Source: Vitrella brassicaformis CCMP3155 (lineage: Eukaryota > Protista > Chromerida). Taken from it: a DNA stretch of 64,000 nucleotides. A program made the position numbers and the translations under genes. The notes below the pieces were generated by a model. The model was given only the letters and a program-made list of their open reading frames with translations. It searched no databases and was not told the origin of the DNA. Of the stretch, positions 29,400 through 56,400 are shown piece after piece. Within the stretch, counting starts at the first letter, position 1, and the number at the start of each line of letters is the position of its first letter. The stretch lies in NCBI GenBank assembly GCA_001179505.1, contig CDMY01000185.1, forward strand, positions 1 to 64,000, in the 5' to 3' direction.

Positions 29400-31713
29400 C
29401 CTGACCGACCGACCGACCGATGCACGCAGAGAAATGAGTAGAAGGACGGGTGCGGTGCACGGGGAGCATCCAGGCGGTTGCATATGTGTGTAGCAAGCAT
29501 CCGATCGCACTTGTCAGTGTTTATACGTACCGATCTACGTGCATAGTCGTTTTTGGGGTTTTTCGTGCCAGCCTCTGTTGGCGGGCGTGGGGGTGCGAGA
29601 GCCAACCTGCCCACACAGGCAGGCAGGCAGCGCACTCACACACCTCCGCCAGTCAGTCTTTCTTCCCCTCTCTGTGGGTGGGTCTGGGTTGGTAGGATGT
29701 GTGTTCGTGTGGTGACGCGAACGAGACTGCAGACGAGGGACTGCTGATGATGGCAATTCATAAGGGTATGTGTGTATGTGTTTCGTGCTTGATTGAATTG
29801 AAACGAACCCGCGCCTCTGTTTGCTGCTGCAGCGTCCGTCCATGGCCATGCAGAGTATCAGTACCCAAGCAGACAGACAGACAGCCAAGAAAGGAAGAAG
29901 GCAAGAAGTGGATGAGTGAGTGGGTTGAGAGGATGAGACGTCAGTGCCCTCCTCTCGACCGGTCCAAGTGAGTGGGTGAGTGAGTCAGTGAGTGAGACAG
30001 ACACACTTGCAGATGAATGAAGACATGGTTAGCGGAGTGAGCGAGAGTGCAATCAGCTGTGTATGTGCACTTGGAAATTCGCGTCGTTCACACACCACAC
30101 ACACACACATTCATACACACATTCATACACACATTCATATATACGTACATAGTGTATGTAGGCAAGTGCACGGCTGTATAGAGCTGTTAAATACACCAAC
30201 CGCACGGTATCGGTCTCCCTCTTCCCTCCCCCTCTCTCCCCCACCACACCACATGACATGGGCAAGACAGACAGACAGACAGAGACGGAGAAACGTTGGA
30301 ACGAGAGGGTCAGAGAAAGAGTTGGTTGAAAATGGAGGTATGCATTGCGCGCTGCCGGCACAAACGCGCTGCACACATTCGATTCGTTCCCACGTAAAAA
30401 CACCATTCATTCATTCATTCATTCGTTCATTCCTGAGAGCTTTACACACTTCCATACATGAGCTGTGGCTCTCTTCCCTCGTCTGAGCTCGTCACGTACT
30501 ATACACACGCATACACATTCACATATGTATCATATGATCACATAAGCAGACAGGGAGATGTCACTCGCTCGCTCGCTCACTCACTACCCCACGCACGCAC
30601 AGGTACGCAACAACCCCAACCAACCCCAAAGCCAAAAACGTGATAGATATATCAGCACTCGTTCAATTCTTCTTCTTCCTCTGCCCTCTCATTCATTCAT
30701 TCATTAGAACACGCGGACACGTACATACAAATTTGGGTGTACAAACACTTATGTAAGGGTATACACGTACACGTATACACACATGTACATGTGCACACAC
30801 AAATAGCCAAGTATGAAAGCAGCCATCACATCATGCATGTGCATGTGCATGCGCCATCCATCCATCCATCCCATCGTCGAGGGTCAAAAAACGCCATATT
30901 GAACCAACAAGCAGCAGAGGAAGCACGAGTTTGAAGAGTGCACTCTAGTGGAGTGAGTCGTGTTGCGATGAGCGCACCCACCCATCGATATCTCGAGACG
31001 ACAGACGAGACGAGACAAACCTGTAAACTTCCCTTTTGGTGGTATTAAAAGTACACAGACAGTGGTAAGCAAACAAGGAAGTAATGAAGGAAGGAGACAA
31101 GGAAGCGAGTCGACAAAACCCATACAAGACAAGACCTGTGCAAAGGTGTGTGTGTGTGCAGGTGCGTATGTGTGTATGTGTGTGTGGTGTGATGCATGAC
31201 GGCCAGTCGATCGGGCCATTCTGTCGTCTGCAGCGGCCCTCCTGACGGCACGTCATGTATGTGTGTGTGTGTGTGTGTGCGTGTGGAAGTGGTGGTTAGT
31301 GTGTCATTTGACACAGCCGGCAGGAAGAATCCACGGCGGCTGTGTGAGTCGTGTGATGGAATGAGATGTGATGGAGAGTGGGGTAAGAAGCATGATGTAC
31401 GAGAGACGCGGCAAGAGCTAAGCACCGACAGGTAAAGACAGACCGACAATCCACCGAGAGCGAACGCCCGAGAAAGAGATCAGCTGCATCTGCGCCGACC
31501 GACACACGTATGCAGCGACCAACACACAGTCAGTCATTCCTAGACGCCCTTGCCTCTTTCGACACGACTGTACCTACCGTACCCTACTCACCCTCCCTGA
31601 CGACAAAAGGCACCCAGCACGAGAAGCGTGCTGTGTGCCTGCATCCGTACAGAGGGGAGAGGGGGGGAGAAACGCCCCATTCTCACCCGAGGGTGGGAGA
31701 AACGCCCCTTTTC

Positions 31714-31714
<1 letters not shown>

Positions 31715-31759
<45 letters not shown>
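31715..31759. repeat. Poly-C tract (about 45 C; poly-G on the minus strand)
   Basis: Homopolymer in a large intergenic region. Confidence 0.95.
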
Positions 31760-31761
<2 letters not shown>

Positions 31762-32612
31762 GACGCGCAAACAGGAAAAAATAACCCCACAACGAACGCA
31801 ATATACCGAGACAGAATAGGCAAATCAACGTCCTCGACCATGTACGAATCACCACACCAACCATGCGCCCATCCCATATCGATGAACGGCCTACGAGAAA
31901 CCAACCACCCCGACACGCAGACCTCACCACGGACAGACCGGCCACATCGCATCACACCACGACATCTCACCTCACCTCCCAGAGAGCGCACGCACATGCA
32001 CACCGACCGACCGACAGACAGACAGGGTACAAAATCTGTCCCCCCCATCCCTTAGCCCGTCTGTGTGTGTGTGTGTGTGTGTGTGTGCCACAGAAGCAAG
32101 AGAGTGTGTGGGGCGGTGACCATTCCGTGAATGGAGGCGACGTGAGACGCATACACAGCATATATCGTTTCATTACACACAGAGCAGCGTATGTACACAC
32201 TCATGTATAGATAGCATTAATGCCTTTCTGTGTGTCTTCTCTCTTCCCCCTACTAGCCTCTAGGCAGGCAGAAAGACACACGGACAGGCGCTTCAAACAT
32301 GCACTCGTGCACCCATCCATCCATCCATCCGTCCACTCGTTCTCTCACGCACACACAGACCCGTGCATGTAACAGCAAAACAAAACAATACACAACGTCA
32401 CGTCAGACTCTCTTTTGGCACTATCACATTGCTCGTTCGCACAGGCAGGCCTTCTTTCCATGGCCCATCTCACGTCATCTCACTCTATAGGAACTCACTG
32501 CATACACTCATAAGGGTGTGACGGCAGGGGAAACCCCACCTCGCCCATCCCCACCCTCTGCTGCGACAACGGCGAGTCGAACATCTCTAACGAAGGGCCC
32601 ACCAGTGCCTCC

Positions 32613-34717
32613 TCACCCACACCCACACTCACACCCACGCCCACCCCCCCTCCCCAACAGACCTCCCTGTCCAGCATGTGCATATCGTCTAACACATCCA
32701 GGAGGGGCGGGGGGCTGGCGGATGGCGGATGGCGAGTGGGGGTCCAGCAAGCCGCCTGGTGAGGGTGAGAAGGGGTGGTGGTTGTGGGGTTGGTGCCATG
32801 ACGTGTGTGGTGCGTTCATGGCGGCAGCCGAGTATGTGCCGAGTGACGCAGAAGAGCTGAGTGACGAGAGGGGGGAGTGGCAATGGGATGAGGGGGGCGG
32901 CGGAGGCCGTGGGACTCGCAGCCACTCATACTCATCCTGAAAAGACCAACACACAAGACGCACCACTCCACTGACACGGATGATTCCCCGGACGGACAAC
33001 CGTCTCTTTGTCTGTCTCACCTGGTCGGTCTCCCCACATGCCTTCTCAGGCTCCAAGGCGTCCATGGCGACACCTCTGCATGGCATCTCGTCTCTTGGCT
33101 GGCTGCTGATGCTGGGTGGCCGCTCGTCGGTGGCCGGTGTGGGCGAGTTAGGAGGGGACAGGAGGGGAGTGGAGGGCGGGGTGGGCAGGGGGAACTGGTA
33201 CACCTGCTGATGCTCCTGGTCCTGCTGATGCCGCTCCCGCTCCCACTCCCGCGCAGGCCCCCGACGCATCGCCACCTGCACGTCTTGCAGCCTACTGGCC
33301 TTCTCCTCACGCTCCTCATCATCGGACCACCGTGACGCCACCCTCTCACAAACACCAGCACCGTCGACCCCATTGTCGCTTTTGACGCGCATCGGCATGT
33401 CGGCACTCGCTGTGGGCGTGCTGCTGTTGCTCTGGCTTCCTGACGCGTCGGTGCCTGCGGCACAGGTGTGCTGCCGGCGCATGAAGGCCAGGGGCCGGGG
33501 GAGGGCTTCGACGGAGTCTGACTTGCGTTTCTTGCTGCTGGAGGTCTTCATGCTGGCCAGCTCGCTGCACACCAGCTGAGACAATTCACCCTGATCAATC
33601 ACACCAACACCACCACACAGGCAGACGATGAGATGAAGTCTGTGGTGCGTTTGTGTCCGGCTCACTCCTGACTGACCATGACGATGCTTTCTGAGGGTCC
33701 CCGCCTCGTTGTGGCCGAAAGCGCCATAGGAGCACAAGCAAGGGAGGGGCGGTGCAACACGCCGTCTTCTTCGTTGCATGGATGAGCAGCGGGCGGCTGC
33801 CCGATGACCTTGGTGACGATCTCGTGCATCGCCTGCAGCAGAGCGAGAGGGCTGGTGGTGGCTCGGGAGGGCGGTAGAGATGATGTTGCTGGTCGGGGCG
33901 GGGGCGGGGGCGGGAGTGAGGGAGGGGGCAGCCGGGCAGACGAGAGGCCATGACGGGTGGAGGTGGTGAAGGTGGTGGTGATGGTCTCTGGCCTTAGCAG
34001 TGGCAGCATGTGTTGTCCGTGTCCTGCGCAGGCCATCTCGTCGCCCTTGTCGTGCCTCTGCTTGAACTCCTTGATGGAGAACCCACGGCGGCTGACACAC
34101 ACTCACAGAGATAAACACAGAGGTCACGCAGCCGCTACCATTAGTCAGTCCCCCGGGCCACCCCCCTGACTCGACTCACCTGCAGAATCTGCTGATGGAG
34201 CTTTCATTGGAGCAGGCATATCCGTATTGGTTGTGCAGCAGCTCCACTACGGCCTCGAGGGTGATCTTTGGCTTGGTCTGCAGCAGGTTCTTGATGATGT
34301 CGAGCGCCGGCTCGTCCAAACTCTTGCCGCGACCAGGCCAAAAGGTCTTGGCCCGCTTGCGCGGCTCCAGAAAGCCTAGTTGAACCAGCCAGCGACGAAC
34401 AGACAACAGCAGATGGGCTGTGTGTGGCTGTGTGGCTGTGTGGCGGTGTGCTGACTGACTCGGGTCTCTGTTGGTGGCTATCATGGTTTCGACTTGCGAG
34501 ATGTATCTGGCGATGCTGCTCTGGCTGAGGTCGAACATGGCTGCTATCTCCTTCTGAGGCTTGCCAGAACGCCATAACCGATACACCTCCTGCAGCCAGC
34601 AAACCAAAACACACAGACACAGACAGACCGTTGGTCGGCCCCTCTGTACGGATCTTTTCTCGTCGAAGTGCGCACCTGTTTGAGACCGCCGGGATGGCTC
34701 TTGCCTCGCTGACCCAT
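32613..34717 (-). CDS. Paired-like / IS630-Tc1-mariner-type bipartite HTH DNA-binding protein without DDE domain
   Basis: Exons 34717-34676, 34589-34460, 34375-34180 and 34091 onward splice to MGQRGKSHPGGLKQEVYRLWRSGKPQKEIAAMFDLSQSSIARYISQ...EPRKRAKTFWPGRGKSLDEPALDIIKNLLQTKPKITLEAVVELLHNQYGYACSNESSISRFCSRRGFSIKE, followed by a low-complexity Pro/Ser/Gln/His tail. 3' end approximate. Confidence 0.75.
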
Positions 34718-34824
34718 CCCTCTTGCTGCACAGGGGAGCGGGGACGGGAAAGCAGCAGGCGCAGACGCGCGTCTGACACAACGTAAAGATCCGAGTCTCG
34801 ACGATCGCGGCCGTTAATGGAACC

Positions 34825-37217
34825 ATGTCTGTCATTGCGGAAGGAGGGGACGCCGTCGTCTTCGGTATGCTCCCCCATCACCATCCCTCCCCTTTGATAC
34901 CATACATTCGCTTCATTCTTTCCCTCTCTCTGTGTGTGCGTCTCTCTGCATGTCTGTGTTTGCAGCCCTTCTCGTGATTGTGGGCATCATCGGCACGTTA
35001 TCGCTGTACATCGGTGTCCGCGCCCTGTACCGCACATGCATCGCACCGCAGCTGAGGAACAAGGCACAACAGAGTAACGTCTTGGCCGTCTTCTTAAGGG
35101 AGAGATGCGACCATGCCGTGAGGGAGGGGTGGGTGCCGCGGCGAGTGGTCAGGGAGGCGGACGTGTTTGGCGCCCCCCTGCTGAGACAAATCCATGCGGA
35201 CGGGCCGCGGATGTGGGACGTGAAGCCACAGGTATGCACGAGCGTTGTCCCATCAATCCTCTTCATGCTGTCGTGTGGCTTCATGCTGTCGTGTGGATGC
35301 CATGCAGCCTCGGTCATCCCCTCCGCCCGACCTCTATGAGCCTCCGAGCTACCTGCTGCCCGTGTCAGTGCACCAGGAGGTGTCCACTCTGCCCCTCCCA
35401 CCACAGTCGGCCGCCTACTTCGAGACAACGCTCCTCCCACACATCACACCTGACGATGACAATGCCAATCAAGACGAGGAGGGGTCGCTCAGCGCGTACA
35501 AGAAGCCACATGGGCCGCCGATCTTTGCCGTCGGTGAGTGAGTGAGACAGGCAGCAGATGAGGGAGGGACTCGGCACAGGGTCGTTTTGGCTTGGTGTGC
35601 CAGGTGTGTGTCCGAGCCCCTACCCGCCAGACTATCTGCCGGGCCTCTTCGCACCGTCCATCGCATTACACAACTGTGCGGCAGACAAACAGCCAGGAAG
35701 AAACACAATGAAAGGGAGACATCCATCATCGTGTTGTGCCCCTTCTCTGTGTGTTCAGTGGCCTACCTAGAGGACGAGGGCCACCGTGGGTCCCGTTGGT
35801 CGCGGCCCAAGGGCGGCGAGGGCGGCATCTACAACGGCAGTGTCGACGCATGCACACCGGCGCCATTCTTCGATGTCGGCGCGACGATAGGCTGCGAGAT
35901 CGATCGAGCGCAGGGTACGCTGCTCTGTCCCTTTGAGGGTGGCATGAATGGCCTGTCTTGTGTGCTCATCGATCAGGGAGGGTGACGTTCTTTCTGTTCC
36001 GCAGCAGCAGCATCGACGGGAGTGGCGGCCAGAGGACCACAACCAGAACCAGGCGGCGGAGACAGAGAGGCGTGAGCGAGAGGACGAGGCGGCTGCTGTA
36101 TCGGGTGGTGCAGCCACACAGGGCACCGACCGTCATCACCGTCAAGGCGCCCCAATTCACTCTGTGCGTCGGGGGGGCCACACAAACGCTGCGGTGCCAT
36201 CCTGGATATGTTGTTGTGTGTGTGTTGCGTGTCGTCATGTCACACAGGCGCACCCCGCTGGATGCCTTCACGTTGGACCCTGACCGGCCGCCGGAACATC
36301 TCGAGAGCGACACCCCCGCCATGTTCGTCACTGTGGCAACAACTCACCCACGTGAGCAGCCCACACCCTTGTCCATGGCCCCGTGCACATATCTATCAAA
36401 TCTTTCTTGACCAGGTGCGGTGTCCTTCAGCGTCAATTTCGGCGAGCAGCCTTTCCTCCGCGAGGAGGGCGACGACATCGGCTTTGGCGTGCCCCTCTGC
36501 CCCTCAGCCCCCGGACACGCTGACAAGACTCGATCTGTCCGCCTTTTGCTGAAGCAGGCCATCGCCAAGACCTTCTCGCGGCCGCGAGCATCCCCTCTTG
36601 GGCGACAGGAGGTCTCCACACCTGATGACGCTGAAGAGTCGAAGGGAGAAGGGGATGTCCGTGTGGTGCTGGGGCGAGGTCGATCATCGAGCACCGCCCC
36701 ATCGGAGACTGCCACCCTGGGACCAATCCCACCCGCCCCAACATTCCACCAACCACACAGACCACCAGCCGATAGACAGCACCAAGAGCAGCAGCCATCC
36801 TATCCCAAACGTGAGAAACGGCCGTCCCTGTCTGCACTGGTGGAGGGCAACAAAATCCTCAGAGATGGCGGTGTCGGGAGTGGTGCTGGTCGTCGGGCGT
36901 CGGAGCCAGCACTGGGGGTGTCGGCCCTGCCGCCTGGATGGATGATGCATGAGGGAGAAATGTCTCCCCCTCCCTCCGCCCCGATGAGCGACTCGCCACC
37001 CCTTTCCCTACTCGCAGGCCTCACACCGCTCGACGAGAGAAGACGGCCGACCATCACGTCAACCACCACACACCAGCCAGCGATGCGGCCAGTGGTGTCT
37101 CCTACTCTTCACGCGGCCAGCCGTTCGCCGCCGGCATCGTGGGCTCCTCCCGCCAGAGGGCCGTCGATGGAGATCGACCTGCTGCCGCCACCAGCTGCTG
37201 CTGCCAGCAGGGGCTGA
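34825..37217 (+). CDS. N-terminal TM + SPRY-domain protein (Ssh4/Ear1-like)
   Basis: MSVIAEGGDAVVF|ALLVIVGIIGTLSLYIGV TM helix; SPRY motifs AAYFETT, IFAVG, PYPPDYLPG, GATIGCEID, VTFFL and SVNFGEQPF. Confidence 0.75.
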
Positions 37218-48465: not shown

Positions 48466-51087
48466 CACCTCTAAGCTCGCAAACCCTAATACTTTCGCTT
48501 TGGAGGCTTTTTCCCATTGCAGGGGGCCACAGGGGCGGCTGGTGATGTGCTCATCTAAACCCTAGTCATCACATCATTCAATTGAGGATATCAGCGGATG
48601 TCCATCCGATTCGATGCATCCAACGACACATGCAGAACAGACCGCCACTTCAACCCATCACTGCACTTTGCAGTCCTGGCTGTGTTTGCCGTCGGCAGGG
48701 CGGCTGTCGCCCCCCGTCTGCGATGAATCAGATGCCCCGCTACCCTCATCCTCTCCCACAGCCGCATGTCCCTCTCCCGCTACTGCCGGATCCTGGCCGC
48801 CCCGCTCGCCAGTCCCGTCAAGAGCGGCTTCCTTCTCCTGCCTCTCTGCTGCGGCCTGCTTGGCGGCGGCCTCCTCTGCTTCTTGTCTGCGCCTCTCCTC
48901 CAGCAGCTCCTCAGCACGACGGACAATACGATCGATGTCGCCCTCTGACAAACACACGCCATAGACACACACACAAGTGAATAAATGCATGAGGGGCGAC
49001 CGCCTCTCTCTCTCTCTCTCTCTCCCTCTGTGTGTGTGTGTGTGTGTGTGTGTGTNNNNNNNNNNNNNNNNNNNNNNNNNNNNNNNNNNNNNNNNNNNNN
49101 NNNNNNNNNNNNNNNNNNNNNNNNNNNNNNNNNNNNNNNNNNNNNNNNNNNNNNNNNNNNNNNNNNNNNNNNNNNNNNNNNNNNNNNNNNNNNNNNNNNN
49201 NNNNNNNNNNNNNNNNNNNNNNNNNNNNNNNNNNNNNNNNNNNNNNNNNNNNNNNNNNNNNNNNNNNNNNNNNNNNNNNNNNNNNNNNNNNNNNNNNNNN
49301 NNNNNNNNNNNNNNNNNNNNNNNNNNNNNNNNNNNNNNNNNNNNNNNNNNNNNNNGGAAGCGGGTCATGCACTCGGTGGGCTTGTCGGGCTGCTGCTGCT
49401 GCTGCTGCTGCTCGAGGTAGGTCCGCTTGTCCTTCTTGACGGCACAGAAGGCCCGCAGCGTCTCGTACGACCTCGCCAGGTCGGTGTTCTTCTCTGTCAG
49501 CTCGTCTCTCTCCCTGGTGAGCTCCTCCTTGGCTGTGCGGAGGGTCTCGAGGTGCTGCTGCAGCTCCCCCGAGTAGGACCCTGCGCCCGCCCGGATGCGG
49601 CCGTGGAGCTTCTTGTTCTCGTCATTGACACGCTGGAACGCACTGCGCAAGTTGCGGTTCTCACGCTGATAAATAGATGGATGCAGGGATGAATGAGATC
49701 ACACAGACACACACGTGTGTGTATGTGTGTGTCAGTCAGTCAGTCAGTCAACGGACCTCCACTTTTTCGATTCGTTCGGTGAGTGGCTCGGTGCCGGCCT
49801 CCATGGTCTGCAGGCGGGTCTCCTGCCGAGCCTTGATCTTCTCCATGGCCTCTATCCTGCACACACAACACAGACAGACGCATGACATTCACAAGTCTGT
49901 CTGTGGTGCGCCGGTCGGTGTTCTTGTGGCAGCTGACTGACTTTGCGCGGCAGTGGCTCATTTCCATCTGAAGGTCGGCGGCCGTCTGCTTCAGGCGGGC
50001 GCACTCACTCTCAGCTATGTCACGCTGGACACACACACACAGACCATACACGCCATCTGATCTGTTGACGGTGGCTTGGTTGGTTCGTATGTGCGTACCT
50101 TTCTGCTCTCTTCCTTGAGGCTGTTTGCGAGTCCGTCGATCCGCTCTCTAAGCGCCTGTCTCTCCCTCTGGTGCCGCTCCTCCACCTTGTGCATCTCGTC
50201 CTCCTTGTCGGCCTTCAAGCGCTGACAACACGAATGCACACAGCCACACAGCCACACACAAATACACACACCATCCATCCATGTGTGTGCGGGCGGACAG
50301 ATGGGGAGGGTTCTTGCCTTGTAGAGTTGGCCCTGTTCCGTCTTGGCGAGTATGGCGCACTGCTGCTCCAGCTGCCGCACACGCCACCTCAGCTGCCGCG
50401 CCACATCACCATCCACACCACCACCCTCCCCCTCCCCGCCCTCGCCCCCCTCTGCACCATCCTCACTGCTGTCAATGTCGTACTCGGTGTTGACGCCACA
50501 CTCAACGGACGTGTCCTCCTCCCCACCCACACACACATCCGCAGTGGCCGTCGGCTCCGTCGCCACGGCAGTGTCGAGCAGCACTTTGTCGGTGCGTGCG
50601 CGGAGGGCCGCCCGTGTCTCTGCCAACTGGCTCTGTGTGTCGGTGAGAGTGGCCTGGAGCCGCGTCTTGTCCTCCTCGCCGGTGCCGAGGTCCGTGTGGA
50701 GCTCGCGGATGTCTTGCTGGGCCTGGGAGAGGTCGTGGGAGCTGCTGTGGAGACATGCAGTCAGCTCGGCGATCAGCCCGCCATGGTGAGACCGCTCGGA
50801 AGCAACCTGAGACATCAAGAGCGTTTTGTAAATGTTGTTGGGTGCGCGTTGGTCGGTTGTGCGCACCTGATGCGCGTGCAGGTCGGCGTCGAGGCTGATG
50901 ATGTCGATGTAGGCCTGATGGAGAGGGCCCGCCAACGCACTCGACTGCAGCGAAAGATAACGAACGAGTAGGCAAGATGCTCAGCTCCGTTCTAGATGCA
51001 CGTGTGCCTACCTGGTCTAACAGCTCGTATAGCTGTGCGTCCAGCTGGCCGATCCTGCCCGCCAGAGACTCCGCCAACTCTGCCACA

Positions 51088-51118
<31 letters not shown>

Positions 51119-51334
51119 TAGGCGGGCAGCGCGTCAACAGTGCAATTGGTGGGTGGAATATGTCGCAACGCACCGACCTGGCTATCATCCTGCTCCTCCG
51201 AGATGCTGCTGATGAGGTCCTCCTCAAGCGCACTCACGTGCCTCACCAGCCGCTCGCGGTCCTCCCTCCCCCACACGAGCTCCCTCTCCATCCCCCTGAT
51301 GTCCCTCTCCAGCTTCGCCACGCGAGCCCTCTCG
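48466..51334 (-). repeat. Segmental duplicate of 52853-55490 (kinesin 3' exons, 3' UTR and downstream promoter); 5'-truncated kinesin tail copy
   Basis: Near-identical sequence and the same ORFs (48658-49650 vs 53059-53820; 50015-50935 vs the 3' part of 54185-55990). Confidence 0.95.
49056..49355. other. Assembly gap (300 N) inside the duplicate; the paralogous copy implies only about 70 bp are missing
   Basis: Flanks match about 53456 and 53529 in the other copy. Confidence 0.9.
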
Positions 51335-51355
51335 CCACACAACACAACACCCCCC

Positions 51356-51703
51356 GCCACACACGTGTGTGTGTGTGCAGCTACTCGACAGCCACGCACC
51401 CTCCCTGTCTATGAGTGTGTGTGTGTGCAGACACTCGACAGCCACGCACCCCCTCGCCACACACGTGTGTGTGTGTGCAGCTACTCGACAGCCACGCACC
51501 CCCCCGCCACACACGTGTGGGTGTGTGCAGCTACTCGACAGCCACGCACCCTCCCTGTCTATGAGTGTGTGTGTGTGCAGACACTCGACAGCCACGCACC
51601 CCCTCGCCACACACGCCACGCACCCCCCCGCCACACACGTGTGTGTGTGTGCAGCTACTCGACAGCCACGCATCCCCCCGCCACACACGTGTGTGTGTGC
51701 AGC
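51356..51703. repeat. Complex minisatellite (units GCCACACACGTGTGTGTGTGTGCAGCTACTCGACAGCCACGCACCC and variants) at the duplication breakpoint
   Basis: About 6-7 imperfect units in two alternating types, each ending in ...CTCGACAGCCACGCA(C/T)CC. Confidence 0.9.
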
Positions 51704-52640
51704 AGAGAGGCCGGCGGAACTTTTGACGGGCAGCAGAGGGGCGGGCGGAACTTTGCTGACCGGCCGCATGCTGGAAGGGCACTTGATCTCGATTAACACC
51801 AGCCATTAATTAGATGCGGGGAGCATCGAGCCCGCACCACCACCATCACCCGCATCGCATAGATAGCACACCAGCAGCAGTGTTCGCTGGACGAACCTGA
51901 CATATATACACCCGGCCACACGAGCTCTTTCTCGGTGAGCAGGCCCATTCCACCCACCATGCTCACCTACTGATGTCGGTCCACCCAAATGCCGACATGT
52001 CTGTCACCGCCCACCAAGCACCTGCACACCAACAAGCTCAAAACACAAGCAGTGAGTGCACTCGTTGAGAACCATTGGTCGATGCAGGCAGAACCATGTG
52101 ACTGACCTTGGTTGACGCAGATCCATATGCCCTTCCCTTCCTTTAGCTAGTCAGGCGTCCGTCACGTCACTTCACGGGTGGTGCCTTCTTATCGCCAGGG
52201 GCGGCCGCGCAAGGTCCCCCGGACTCCCTCCAGATGCTCAGCCGCCATCAATCAGCTCCTTCCTTATGCCCACAGAAACAAATGTCCTCTAGAAAGTTCC
52301 GCTGTTGCTCCAAACCCACACCACCGAAAAGCCCTCTTGCTGGCGAAGAGAATGACCTGCAAAATGCCTAAGGAAAAGCATTCCTCGGAGCTGCACGTCA
52401 CACACAGCACCAAGCATTCGGAATATATGTGCCTTCCTCCTTGTGTGACGTCACCGTGAGCAGCGGCCAGCTGCAGCACAGCAAAGCCTTCATCGAGAGC
52501 AATCCTCTGACACCCTAAGGAGCCTCCGATGCTGCCACCTTCCACACACACTGGGCGGCCATCTGCGCATCCACACACACTTACGGCTCAAGCAAATGAA
52601 GGAGAGCATGTCAGGAGGCCGTGTGTTAACGAATAGTGAC

Positions 52641-52718: not shown

Positions 52719-53058
52719 TTCTGACACAGACAGACACAAAAGGCACGTCAGCAGCAGATATTTGCCCTTCTGGCTGCTCCTGACTGCGTGTGTGGCCTTT
52801 CTGTGAGCCTCTCTGCTGCTGATCTGATCTTCTTTGCGCGTGCTTTCCCCTGCACCTCTAAGCTCGCAAACCCTAGACCCCAAACCCTAATACTTTCGCT
52901 TTGGAGGCTTTTTCCCATTGCAGGGGGCCACAGGGGCGGCTGGTGATGTGCTCATCTAAACCCTAGTCATCACATCATTCAATTGAGGATATCAGCGGAT
53001 GTCCATCCGATTCGATGTATCCAACGACACATGCAGAACAGACCGCCACTTCAACCCA

Positions 53059-53426
53059 TCACTGCACTTTGCAGTCCTGGCTGTGTTTGCCGTCGGCAGG
53101 GCGGCTGTCGCCCCCCGTCTGCGATGAATCAGATGCCCCGCTACCCTCATCCTCTCCCACAGCCGCATGTCCCTCTCCCGCTACTGCCGGATCCTGGCCG
53201 CCCCGCTCGCCAGTCCCGTCAAGAGCGGCTTCCTTCTCCTGCCTCTCTGCTGCGGCCTGCTTGGCGGCGGCCTCCTCTGCTTCTTGTCTGCGCCTCTCCT
53301 CCAGCAGCTCCTCAGCACGACGGACAATACGATCGATGTCGCCCTCTGACAAACACACGCCATAGACACACACACAAGTGAATAAATGCATGAGGGGCGA
53401 CCGCCTCTCTCTCTCTCTCTCTCTCC

Positions 53427-53458
<32 letters not shown>

Positions 53459-56400
53459 CTATGTGTGTGGTCACCTGTGAGGACGTAGTAGGGGTCTCTT
53501 CCCGAGCTGTCCAGCGGCCATTTGGTGCGGAAGCGGGTCATGTACTCGGTGGGCTTGTCGGGCTGCTGCTGCTGCTGCTGCTCGAGGTAGGTCCGCTTGT
53601 CCTTCTTGACGGCACAGAAGGCCCGCAGCGTCTCGTACGACCTCGCCAGGTCGGTGTTCTTCTCTGTCAGCTCGTCTCTCTCCCTGGTGAGCTCCTCCTT
53701 GGCTGTGCGGAGGGTCTCGAGGTGCTGCTGCAGCTCCCCCGAGTAGGACCCTGCGCCCGCCCGGATGCGGCCGTGGAGCTTCTTGTTCTCGTCATTGACA
53801 CGCTGGAACGCACTGCGCAAGTTGCGGTTCTCACGCTGATAAATAGATGGATGCAGGGATGAATGAGATCACACAGACACACACGTGTGTGTATGTGTGT
53901 GTCAGTCAGTCAGTCAGTCAACGGACCTCCACTTTTTCGATTCGTTCGGTGAGTGGCTCGGTGCCGGCCTCCATGGTCTGCAGGCGGGTCTCCTGCCGAG
54001 CCTTGATCTTCTCCATGGCCTCTATCCTGCACACACAACACAGACAGACGCATGACATTCACAAGTCTGTCTGTGGTGCGCCGGTCGGTGTTCTTGTGGC
54101 AGCTGACTGACTTTGCGCGGCAGTGGCTCATTTCCATCTGAAGGTCGGCGGCCGTCTGCTTCAGGCGGGCGCACTCACTCTCAGCTATGTCACGCTGGAC
54201 ACACACACACAGACCATACACGCCATCTGATCTGTTGACGGTGGCTTGGTTGGTTCGTATGTGCGTACCTTTCTGCTCTCTTCCTTGAGGCTGTTTGCGA
54301 GTCCGTCGATCCGCTCTCTAAGCGCCTGTCTCTCCCTCTGGTGCCGCTCCTCCACCTTGTGCATCTCGTCCTCCTTGTCGGCCTTCAAGCGCTGACAACA
54401 CGAATGCACACAGCCACACAGCCACACACAAATACACACACCATCCATCCATGTGTGTGCGGGCGGACAGATGGGGAGGGTTCTTGCCTTGTAGAGTTGG
54501 CCCTGTTCCGTCTTGGCGAGTATGGCGCACTGCTGCTCCAGCTGCCGCACACGCCACCTCAGCTGCCGCGCCACATCACCATCCACACCACCACCCTCCC
54601 CCTCCCCGCCCTCGCCCCCCTCTGCACCATCCTCACTGCTGTCAATGTCGTACTCGGTGTTGACGCCACACTCAACGGACGTGTCCTCCTCCCCACCCAC
54701 ACACACATCCGCAGTGGCCGTCGGCTCCGTCGCCACGGCAGTGTCGAGCAGCACTTTGTCGGTGCGTGCGCGGAGGGCCGCCCGTGTCTCTGCCAACTGG
54801 CTCTGTGTGTCGGTGAGAGTGGCCTGGAGCCGCGTCTTGTCCTCCTCGCCGGTGCCGAGGTCCGTGTGGAGCTCGCGGATGTCTTGCTGGGCCTGGGAGA
54901 GGTCGTGGGAGGTGCTGTGGAGACATGCAGTTAGCTCGGCTATCAGCTCGCCATGGTGAGACTGCTCGGAAGCAACCTGAGACATCAAGAGCGTTTTGTA
55001 AAGGTTGTAGGGAGCATGTTGGTCGGTTGTGCGCACCTGATGCGAGTGCAGGTCAGCGTCGAGGCTGATGATGTCGATGTAGGCCTGATGGAGAGGGCCC
55101 GCCAACGCACTCAACTGCAGCGAAAGATAACGAGAAGGCAAGATGCTCAGCTCCGTTCTAGATATACGTGTGCCTACCTGGTCTAACAGGTCGTATAGCT
55201 GTGCATCCAGCTGGCCGATCCTGCCCGCCAGAGACTCCGCCAACTCTGCCACATACTGCACACACACACGCACACAGACAGGCAGCACGTTCACAGTGAA
55301 ATTGGTGGGTGGAATATGTCGCAACGCACCGACCTGGCTATCATCCTGCTCCTCCGAGATGCTGCTGATGAGGTCCTCCTCAAGCGCACTCACGTGCCTC
55401 ACCAGCCGCTCGCGGTCCTCCCTCCCCCACACGAGCTCCCTCTCCATCCCCCTGATGTCCCTCTCCAGCTTCGCCACGCGAGCCCTCTCGACCCGGACAC
55501 ACTCAACGGCCTCGGCTGTGCGGCTCTCCAGCTCCTGCTTGAGCTCGAAGTTGTGGGTCTGCTCGGCCTCGTACCGCTCGAACAGCTCGTCGTACTCTTG
55601 CTTCTGACTGGCGAGGGCGTCGGCCGCCCCCTGCAGCTCCTTCCGCACGGAGTGCTCGTGTGCGGTGGCTTCCTCCAGCCGCGAGGCCATCTCGGTGAGC
55701 TGGTCGCTGCTCTGCGTGCCTTGTGTGGCGGCCTTGCGGATGTGCTCCTGGAGCCGATGGACCTCGGCGGTCAGCGACGCGCGGGCATCCTCTGCTGACT
55801 TGAGCTGCTCGGCCATCTCCATCTGATGGGCCAGGCCACAGACAGGCGAGAGCTGTGCGGTGCTGTGCGGTGTGCGTACCTTTTCTGAGTGGAGGTCTTC
55901 CAGTTCCTTCTTGGTGTCCTTTGCGGTGCGCTCAGCGTGGTGCAGACGAGACCTGAAGTCGTCACGCTCAACCTGCCAGACACGCGCCACTCACACATGT
56001 CCACACACGTCTGTGTCTCTTTCCTTGGTTCGTGCAGTGCAGTGCAGTGCAGTACAGTGCATCGCTGGCTGGATGTGTGGTGTCATCTCATTCACCTCGG
56101 CCTGTGCGAGGGCATCCTTGAGTGCGATGACGGCCCGGCCCGAGTCATCTGGCGAGTCCTTCGAGGCAGCACTCCGCAGCTGAGACTCAAGATGCTGCAC
56201 CCAGCAACACGAGACACACGATGAATGCATCCTCGTTCCTTCGTTTCGTTGTGGGCTGATTCACCTTGATGGTGTCAGCGAGTTTGTTTCTCTCTAAGGC
56301 CAGGTCCTCATTGTCACGCTCCAGACCGTCAACATCCTGCACACAAAGACAGACAAACGTGGTGAGACCCTGTAGTGCAAAAAGCCGTGCCGTGTCTCTC

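What the first reader, a model, noticed from the sequence alone, without database searches (positions are those of the whole stretch)
32613..34717. Domesticated IS630/Tc1-mariner DNA-binding domain: a paired-like transcription factor candidate
Seen: the first about 130 aa form two HTH units joined by a basic GRGK linker, followed by SISRFCSRRGFSIK. This closely follows the N-terminus of IS630/Tc1 transposases (G-x-S/P-x-x-EIA...S-x-S-x-I-x-R; GR-x-x-x-L; P-x-x-TL-x-E/A; S-x-S-x-I-x-R-x-x-x-R-x-G-x-S-x-K). Where the DD(35)E catalytic domain should start there is a long Pro/Ser/Gln/His low-complexity tail with an NLS-like SKKRKS. Three spliceosomal introns interrupt the DNA-binding region, I saw no TIRs, and it shares a promoter of about 107 bp with a host gene. 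Known: the animal Pax paired domain and other host factors derive from Tc1/mariner transposases. Inference: an independent domestication producing a new transcription factor in an alveolate lineage otherwise dominated by AP2 factors.
Basis: partly seen in the sequence, partly recalled or inferred. Interest (0 to 1): 0.8.

Follow-up and report, generated by a model that had tools for sequence, protein, structure and literature searches.

The report
Transposase-derived DNA-binding gene in Vitrella
The alga Vitrella brassicaformis has an expressed, intron-bearing gene that keeps only the two-part DNA-binding head of an IS630-type jumping-gene enzyme, joined to a disordered tail; animals built factors such as Pax the same way, so this is a new example, with its DNA binding still untested.

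Summary
Window 32613-34717 (minus strand) is a six-exon gene of Vitrella brassicaformis CCMP3155, already public as the unnamed protein CEL93690.1 / A0A0G4EE95.

- **DNA-binding head:** residues 1-133 form two three-helix HTH units joined by a disordered basic linker. They align collinearly with the N-terminus of IS630-family transposases (NCBIfam E 2.6e-9; hhalign probability 97.5%).
- **No transposon features:** there is no DDE relic in any frame and no terminal inverted repeats. The rest is a Pro/Ser-rich tail with a KKRK cluster.
- **Expression:** RNA-like contigs splice introns 3 and 4.
- **Relatives:** a search of 1.84 billion proteins found only one relative, a Vitrella paralog. The scan's note s1-227082 had flagged that paralog on other DNA. 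It shares two intron positions with this gene.
- **Selection:** dN/dS for the head is 0.26 (CI 0.13-0.42), while the tails no longer align.

This is a host gene pair built on a transposase-type DNA-binding module, not a decayed transposon.

"Paired-like" describes the architecture only, because no PAX or Tc1 profile matches. The role as a transcription factor is inferred. No ortholog was found outside Vitrella.

The parts
34676..34717 (-). Exon 1 (residues 1-14, ATG at 34717-34715). It holds the start of HTH1 helix 1.
   Evidence: Sequence. It matches P0001. The paralog encodes the same 14 residues without an intron. They align to the very N-terminus of IS630 transposases.
34590..34675 (-). 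Intron 1 (86 nt, GT..AG, phase 0). Absent from the paralog.
   Evidence: RNA contigs do not cover it.
34460..34589 (-). Exon 2 (residues 15-57 plus 1 nt). It holds HTH1: helices 9-21, 26-33 and 37-54.
   Evidence: Pfam HTH_28 E 5.6e-5, below cut-off. AlphaFold2 model, pLDDT 85-90 here.
34376..34459 (-). Intron 2 (84 nt, GT..AG, phase 1 inside the Ser58 codon). The paralog has an intron at the same position and phase.
   Evidence: A contig of run X2 ends exactly at 34375.
34180..34375 (-). Exon 3 (residues 59-122). It holds the basic disordered linker (59-73, with PGRGKS) and HTH2 (helices 79-91, 97-106, 115-124).
   Evidence: Pfam HTH_32 E 8.7e-4 and HTH_33, both below cut-off. Model. This is the most conserved segment between the paralogs: pN 0.17 against pS 0.59.
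34092..34179 (-). Intron 3 (88 nt, GT..AG, phase 2). Absent from the paralog.
   Evidence: A contig of run X1 joins 34091 to 34180. DNA runs read through.
33677..34091 (-). Exon 4 (residues 123-261). It holds the RRGFSIK end of the transposase-like head and helix 129-144, then a Pro/Thr/Ser-rich tail.
   Evidence: No Pfam family beyond residue 130.
33591..33676 (-). Intron 4 (86 nt, GT..AG, phase 0, after Met261). The paralog has an intron at the same position and phase (after Met197).
   Evidence: A contig of run X1 carries the joint 33589/90 to 33676/7. Paralog locus.
33021..33590 (-). Exon 5 (residues 262-451). It holds the short conserved ELSxLxxxELA motif and the KKRK cluster (residues 281-284, about 33522-33533), then low-complexity tail.
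   Evidence: BLASTP segment to the paralog, E 0.022. A contig of run X1 covers 33171-33589.
32937..33020 (-). Intron 5 (84 nt, GT..AG, phase 0).
   Evidence: RNA contigs do not cover it.
32613..32936 (-). The public annotation instead removes 32561-32693 and ends at 32495.
   Evidence: A contig of run X1 runs unbroken from 32400 to 32605, across the annotated acceptor. This mildly favours the unspliced end.
34718..34824 (.). 107-nt gap to the divergent neighbouring gene (617 aa, no Pfam family, plus strand from 34825).
   Evidence: Gene calls on contig CDMY01000185.1. The neighbour is also spliced in run X1.

Best explanation
This is a host gene of Vitrella brassicaformis, one of two old paralogs. 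Its first 133 residues are the bipartite DNA-binding head of an IS630-type (IS630/Tc1/mariner superfamily) transposase, kept from the original start codon onwards. The DDE catalytic domain has been replaced by a disordered Pro/Ser-rich tail.

**Shown**
- The head is homologous to the IS630 N-terminus.
- There is no DDE domain and there are no TIRs.
- The gene is transcribed and spliced.
- The two copies share two intron positions.
- The head is under purifying selection while the tail diverges freely.

**Inferred mechanism**
- The KKRK cluster takes the protein into the nucleus.
- The two three-helix units each read a half-site in the major groove, and the basic linker lies in the minor groove, as in Tc3, Sleeping Beauty and Pax.
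- The tail recruits partners.
- The protein therefore acts as a sequence-specific DNA-binding factor, either a transcription regulator or a chromatin/repeat binder.
For: - **Identity:** the protein is CEL93690.1 of V. brassicaformis.
- **NCBIfam:** IS630 is the best hit for both paralogs. Scores are 37.0 bits (E 2.6e-9) and 26.7 bits (E 3.5e-6), in one collinear stretch covering both HTHs and the linker.
- **Plasmid tblastn:** in all 12 plasmid records whose match covers at least 80% of the head, the annotated genes under the match are IS630-type transposase genes or their HTH-only first reading frame; three of the 12 carry no annotation there or only 'transposase'. IS3 and recombinase hits cover HTH1 only.
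- **Alignment:** shared positions run from Met1 through FD(L/V)S, LEP, G-GK, the IT..EL stretch of HTH2 and S(I/L)SRF..RG(F/Y)S.K. BLASTP E is 7e-10. hhalign gives 97.5% probability over 116 columns.
- **Model:** two three-helix units with a disordered linker at 59-73, mean pLDDT 74.
- **Atlas:** the nearest clusters are all transposase-type HTH proteins.
- **Nothing transposon-like remains:** no DDE and no TIRs.
- **Splicing:** RNA-like contigs splice introns 3 and 4.
- **Paralog:** 64% identity over residues 1-133. Intron positions are shared at Ser58 (phase 1) and after Met261/197 (phase 0). dN/dS is 0.26 with bootstrap CI 0.13-0.42 and dS about 1.2.
Against: - All Pfam hits for this copy are below the gathering cut-offs. 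Only the paralog passes one, HTH_Tnp_4, which is the Harbinger/IS5-type HTH.
- IS21 scores close behind IS630: 30.4 against 37.0 bits.
- The two IS630 sequences used for hhalign were chosen as the best tblastn hits, so that E-value is flattering.
- PDB sequence and fold searches give nothing significant.
- No ortholog was found in any other species, Chromera included.
- The RNA status of runs X1 and X2 is a guess by the tool, supported only by the canonical joints.
- DNA binding, localisation and the regulatory role are untested.
Confidence: 0.65

Rival explanations
1. The head is a generic tandem-HTH module. It may come from another transposase superfamily (IS21, IS481/IS3, Harbinger), or it may not be transposase-derived at all. 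On this view the resemblance to IS630 reflects the common HTH clan.
For: - IS21 (E 2.7e-7) and IS481 (E 6.8e-4) also match collinearly.
- The paralog's HTH1 passes the Pfam cut-off for HTH_Tnp_4.
- The structural neighbours of each half are sigma-70 region 4, LuxR and AraC units, at Z 6-7.
- IstA ranks next to Pax in Foldseek.
Against: - IS630 ranks first for both paralogs.
- Every long pairwise hit whose annotation names a family is IS630-type, none is IS21 or IS481, and the alignment starts at Met1.
- HTH_Tnp_4 covers only about 35 residues of HTH1.
- To my knowledge IS21 has no eukaryotic elements; this was not tested here.
Confidence: 0.17
2. This is a decaying, truncated transposon copy that happens to be transcribed from the neighbour's bidirectional promoter. 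It has no host function.
For: - The family is confined to one species and has only two copies.
- RNA coverage is low and patchy.
- The tail is low-complexity and has no known domain.
Against: - dN/dS of the head is 0.26, with the CI below 0.42 at dS about 1.2.
- The 558-codon frame is intact across five introns.
- Two intron positions and a short tail motif are shared with the paralog.
- There are no TIRs and no DDE remnant in any frame.
- Nucleotide similarity between the two loci is limited to the head exons.
Confidence: 0.06
3. The gene is a host gene as described above, but its role is not gene-specific transcription. It could bind transposon ends or other repeats for silencing, or for centromere or chromatin organisation, like pogo-derived CENP-B/Abp1. 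It could also act as an HTH-only repressor of a related transposase, like the short first-frame product of some bacterial insertion sequences (an analogy from general knowledge, not tested here).
For: - The bacterial IS630 relatives retrieved encode an HTH-only first frame.
- CENP-B(1-129) and the SETMAR DNA-binding domain appear among the weak Foldseek rows.
- Scan notes list other DNA transposons in this genome (unchecked).
Against: - No related autonomous element was detected anywhere.
- No repeat family that could serve as a target is known.
Confidence: 0.12

Closest known systems
IS630-family transposases (bacterial IS630 proper, e.g. the Azospirillum and Roseibium plasmid copies at L002 and L003)
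   Same: The N-terminal 120-130 residues are collinear from Met1: HTH1, an LEP-containing basic linker with G-GK, HTH2, and the closing S-SRF..RG(F/Y)S-KK. Identity is 26-29%. NCBIfam IS630 gives E 2.6e-9.
   Different: There is no DDE_3 catalytic domain, no TIRs and no TA duplication. The gene carries five spliceosomal introns and a 420-residue disordered tail. It scores 37 bits against the family's 100-bit cut-off, so it is not a transposase.
Genes made by co-opting the DNA-binding module of Tc1/mariner transposases in animals (the Pax paired domain; Drosophila cag, CG4570 and toy; PMC13548663)
   Same: Only the bipartite HTH head of a transposase is kept. The catalytic domain is lost, the head is under purifying selection, and the gene is expressed from a fixed host locus.
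   Different: No PAX, Tc3 or mariner profile matches. The host is a chromerid alga. No orthologs exist across species, only one paralog pair. Function is untested.
CENP-B / Abp1 / Jerky / TIGD (pogo-derived) and the SETMAR DNA-binding domain
   Same: A transposase-derived tandem HTH is used by the host to bind DNA. These appear as weak Foldseek neighbours.
   Different: They come from a different branch (pogo, Hsmar1). Many retain the DDE-derived domain. There is no sequence-level match here.

Membership tests
IS630/Tc1/mariner transposase (active or decayed element) | N-terminal bipartite HTH (PAI/RED-like) DNA-binding domain | tested here: met
   NCBIfam IS630 E 2.6e-9, residues 15-141 on profile positions 4-124. 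hhalign 97.5%. Model with two three-helix units.
IS630/Tc1/mariner transposase (active or decayed element) | DDE/DDD catalytic domain (DDE_3 or relatives) | tested here: not met
   No Pfam hit in residues 130-553 or in the other-frame ORFs. tblastn with two IS630 catalytic parts finds nothing better than E 0.5 anywhere in the window, and nothing notable in the gene.
IS630/Tc1/mariner transposase (active or decayed element) | Terminal inverted repeats with a TA target duplication | tested here: not met
   No inverted repeat brackets the gene. The best pairs are low-complexity or lie inside intron 1.
IS630/Tc1/mariner transposase (active or decayed element) | NCBIfam equivalog cut-off (100 bits) | tested here: not met
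   37.0 bits.
PAX paired domain (PF00292) | Profile match to PF00292 | tested here: not met
   PF00292 is absent from the hmmscan lists at E up to 10. HMMER's filters may drop very weak hits.
PAX paired domain (PF00292) | Two three-helix subdomains joined by an extended linker | tested here: met
   AlphaFold2 model. Pax6 and Pax5 are ranks 2-3 in Foldseek but not significant (E 0.04, TM 0.24-0.29).
PAX paired domain (PF00292) | N-terminal beta-hairpin before the PAI subdomain | tested here: inconclusive
   Residues 1-8 are unstructured in the model, with pLDDT below 50.
Pfam HTH_Tnp_4 (HTH of Harbinger/IS5-type DDE nucleases) | Gathering score of 27 bits | tested here: not met
   This copy scores 11-14 bits. 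The paralog P0002 scores 28.5-31.6 bits, which passes, over HTH1 only.
Domesticated transposase gene (usual criteria) | Fixed locus without transposon ends, intact frame, expression | tested here: met
Domesticated transposase gene (usual criteria) | Purifying selection on the retained module | tested here: met
   dN/dS 0.26, CI 0.13-0.42, measured between paralogs.
Domesticated transposase gene (usual criteria) | Syntenic orthologs in other species | tested here: not met
   No relative outside Vitrella in 1.84 billion representatives or in the word search. No second chromerid genome could be searched as DNA.
Sequence-specific transcription factor | Nuclear localisation, specific DNA binding, effect on transcription | not testable with these tools
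   Only an NLS-like KKRK cluster, conserved as KKRQK in the paralog.

The most novel reading that the evidence does not exclude
Vitrella independently created a small family of sequence-specific nuclear regulators from an IS630-type transposase head. This would be a protist parallel to the origin of the Pax paired domain. The two paralogs would read related motifs, possibly relic transposon ends scattered near genes, in a lineage whose known regulators are mostly ApiAP2 proteins.
Probability: 0.25. Interest if true: 0.65.

Novelty: new member of a known kind. Interest (0 to 1): 0.45.

Why it matters
Chromerids are the free-living photosynthetic relatives of apicomplexan parasites, and few DNA-binding regulators other than ApiAP2 proteins are known in them. 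A host gene pair built on a transposase DNA-binding head would add a second, lineage-specific source of such factors. [quoted passage not shown]

- loss of the DDE domain
- intron gain
- duplication
- replacement of the tail

The protein is small enough for direct DAP-seq or SELEX. Its reach is limited: the family seems confined to one species, and the proteins are already in public databases, unnamed.

Tried and rejected
- **Word search, read-through ORF:** no hit. That search could not see proteins of 550 aa.
- **PDB sequence search, two-sequence profile:** nothing. The best hit was the Hin HTH at E 0.84.
- **Foldseek against PDB:** bipartite HTH proteins (Pax, IstA, CENP-B, SETMAR) appear, but all at E of 0.008 or worse and TM below 0.3. 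The free orientation of the two halves defeats global superposition.
- **VIA-align wide search:** only generic three-helix HTH matches for each half (Z 6-7).
- **tblastn of the exon pieces against the whole window:** no further copy in the window.
- **blastn of the two paralog loci:** similarity only in the head exons, so this is not a recent segmental duplication and not a repeated mobile unit.
- **Perfect 15-nt inverted repeat, 31643-31657 / 34639-34653:** rejected as a TIR, because one arm lies inside intron 1.
- **Literature:** nothing on this family in Vitrella.
- **Not built:** I did not make a typed, joined spliced protein. Searches went exon by exon by reference, and then used the database's own record P0001.

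Full report
**Where and what.** The window has about 59% G+C and short GT..AG introns. The gene lies on the minus strand. Reading that strand and checking the arithmetic gives six exons:

| Exon | Window coordinates |
|---|---|
| E1 | 34717-34676 |
| E2 | 34589-34460 |
| E3 | 34375-34180 |
| E4 | 34091-33677 |
| E5 | 33590-33021 |
| E6 | 32936-32613 |

The five introns are 84-88 nt, all GT..AG. The coding sequence is 1677 nt (558 codons) and stays in frame. An exhaustive HMMER search returned a public protein, P0001, that is 100% identical to the exon pieces. It is CEL93690.1 / A0A0G4EE95, an unnamed protein of Vitrella brassicaformis CCMP3155 on contig CDMY01000185.1. Its model equals mine through exon 5. 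It differs only by one more annotated intron (32561-32693) and an end at 32495.

**How the spliced model was searched.** I did not type a joined protein. From then on I used the database's own record.

**Transcription and splicing.** One call of read laying covered 32400-35300.
- Run X1 is RNA by the tool's guess. Its contigs join 34091 to 34180 (intron 3) and 33589/90 to 33676/7 (intron 4), both CT..AC on the plus strand.
- DNA runs X3 and X5 read straight through both introns.
- A 180-nt contig of run X2 ends exactly at 34375, the first base of exon 3.
- X1 also splices the neighbouring gene.
- Introns 1 and 5 and the donor of intron 2 are not covered by RNA contigs. They rest on splice signals, the annotation and the paralog.
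- An X1 contig runs unbroken from 32400 to 32605, across the annotated last acceptor.

**The head.**
- Pfam gives only sub-threshold HTH hits for this copy: HTH_28 at E 5.6e-5, HTH_32 at 8.7e-4, plus HTH_33, HTH_23 and HTH_Tnp_4.
- NCBIfam is more telling. On the spliced head, IS630 family transposase gives E 2.6e-9 and 37 bits. Residues 15-141 align to profile positions 4-124 of 299 in one stretch. IS21 follows at 30.4 bits and IS481 at 19.2 bits. The paralog gives the same order.
- In a tblastn against 72,556 plasmids, 12 records cover at least 80% of the head. Where the matched gene is annotated, it is an IS630-type transposase gene or its HTH-only first frame. Hits to IS3 transposases and recombinases cover HTH1 only.
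- Aligned with two of the IS630 N-termini, the Vitrella proteins share positions from Met1 onward: FD(L/V)S, LEP, G-GK, the IT..EL stretch of HTH2, and S-SRF..RG(F/Y)S-K.
- BLASTP gives E 7e-10. hhalign gives 97.5% probability over 116 columns. Both values are flattered because the targets were picked as best hits.
- AlphaFold2 (mean pLDDT 74) predicts helices 9-21, 26-33 and 37-54, then a disordered linker at 59-73, then helices 79-91, 97-106 and 115-124, and a last helix at 129-144.
- Fold searches are not decisive. Foldseek lists a CRISPR-repeat-binding protein, Pax6, Pax5, IstA, CENP-B and SETMAR, all at E of 0.008 or worse. VIA-align sees generic three-helix units for each half. The Atlas neighbours are all transposase-type HTH proteins, at lead level only.

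**What is missing.**
- No Pfam family matches residues 130-553 or the ORFs in other frames.
- tblastn with two IS630 catalytic parts finds no relic.
- No inverted repeats bracket the gene.
- The tail is 14.6% Pro and 12.4% Ser.

**Relatives and selection.**
- Among 1.84 billion representatives, only one true relative appears. The word search agrees.
- That relative is P0002 (CEM10134.1), a second Vitrella protein on another contig.
- The paralogs are 64% identical over residues 1-133. Beyond that they are unalignable, except for a short motif, M|(G/D)ELS..(I/V)..ELA followed by KKRK or KKRQK.
- Two intron positions are shared exactly: phase 1 inside Ser58 and phase 0 after Met261/Met197. Introns 1 and 3 are private to the window's copy.
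- Nucleotide similarity between the two loci is confined to the head exons.
- I computed Nei-Gojobori counts exon by exon and summed them. They give dN 0.30, dS 1.17 and dN/dS 0.26, with bootstrap CI 0.13-0.42. HTH2 is the most constrained part.
- The ancestor of the pair was therefore already an intron-bearing gene with head plus tail. Both copies have kept the head under selection since an old duplication.

**Interpretation.**
- The best reading is a host gene pair built on the DNA-binding module of an IS630-type transposase. It most likely encodes a nuclear, sequence-specific DNA-binding protein.
- The homology, the loss of the DDE domain, the splicing and the constraint are shown. DNA binding, nuclear import and any regulatory role are inferred.
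- 'Paired-like' is fair as a description of the architecture, but the protein is not a member of the PAX family. The match is to IS630 proper, not to Tc1, mariner or pogo profiles.
- The main rival is that the head comes from another HTH-bearing family (IS21, IS481, Harbinger).
- A decayed transposon is unlikely.
- Co-option of only the DNA-binding module of Tc1/mariner transposases is a described route in animals (PMC13548663). This is therefore a new member of a known kind, in an unusual lineage and apparently restricted to one species.

Noticed in passing
window 48480-51334 and 52881-55490: A near-identical tandem segmental duplication. Copies lie 4156-4401 nt apart, with blocks at 95-100% identity. 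Between them, at 51350-51739, is an array with a 50-nt period.
   Followed up: partly
L001 6647-6946 (contig CDMY01000401.1): A 300-N assembly gap sits inside the paralog gene and the annotation treats it as an intron. The middle of protein P0002 may therefore be incomplete.
   Followed up: partly
L001 4474-5809 and 6001-8387: The paralog also sits head to head with a neighbour, an AA_kinase gene, with 191 nt between the two coding sequences. This mirrors the 107-nt divergent arrangement in the window.
   Followed up: no
window 32495-32693: The public annotation removes a 133-nt intron (32561-32693) and ends the protein at 32495. An RNA-like contig runs unbroken across the annotated acceptor (32400-32605). 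The 3' end of the gene is therefore unsettled.
   Followed up: partly
window 31640-31760: A long C/G-rich homopolymer-like tract (it reads as poly-Pro or poly-Gly in several frames) lies about 0.9 kb downstream of the gene. A (GT)n microsatellite lies at 32060-32090.
   Followed up: no
window 34376-34459, 34590-34675, 34092-34179, 33591-33676, 32937-33020: All five introns of this gene fall within 84-88 nt. Two of them start with the same GTCAGTCA. The paralog's intron at the shared Ser58 position is longer (about 165 nt) and starts with GTCAGTGA.
   Followed up: no
window 34825-37217 (+): The divergent neighbour encodes a 617-aa protein with no Pfam family on record. It has a hydrophobic stretch near the N-terminus (ALLVIVGIIGTLSLYIGV) and is spliced in the RNA-like run.
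   Followed up: no
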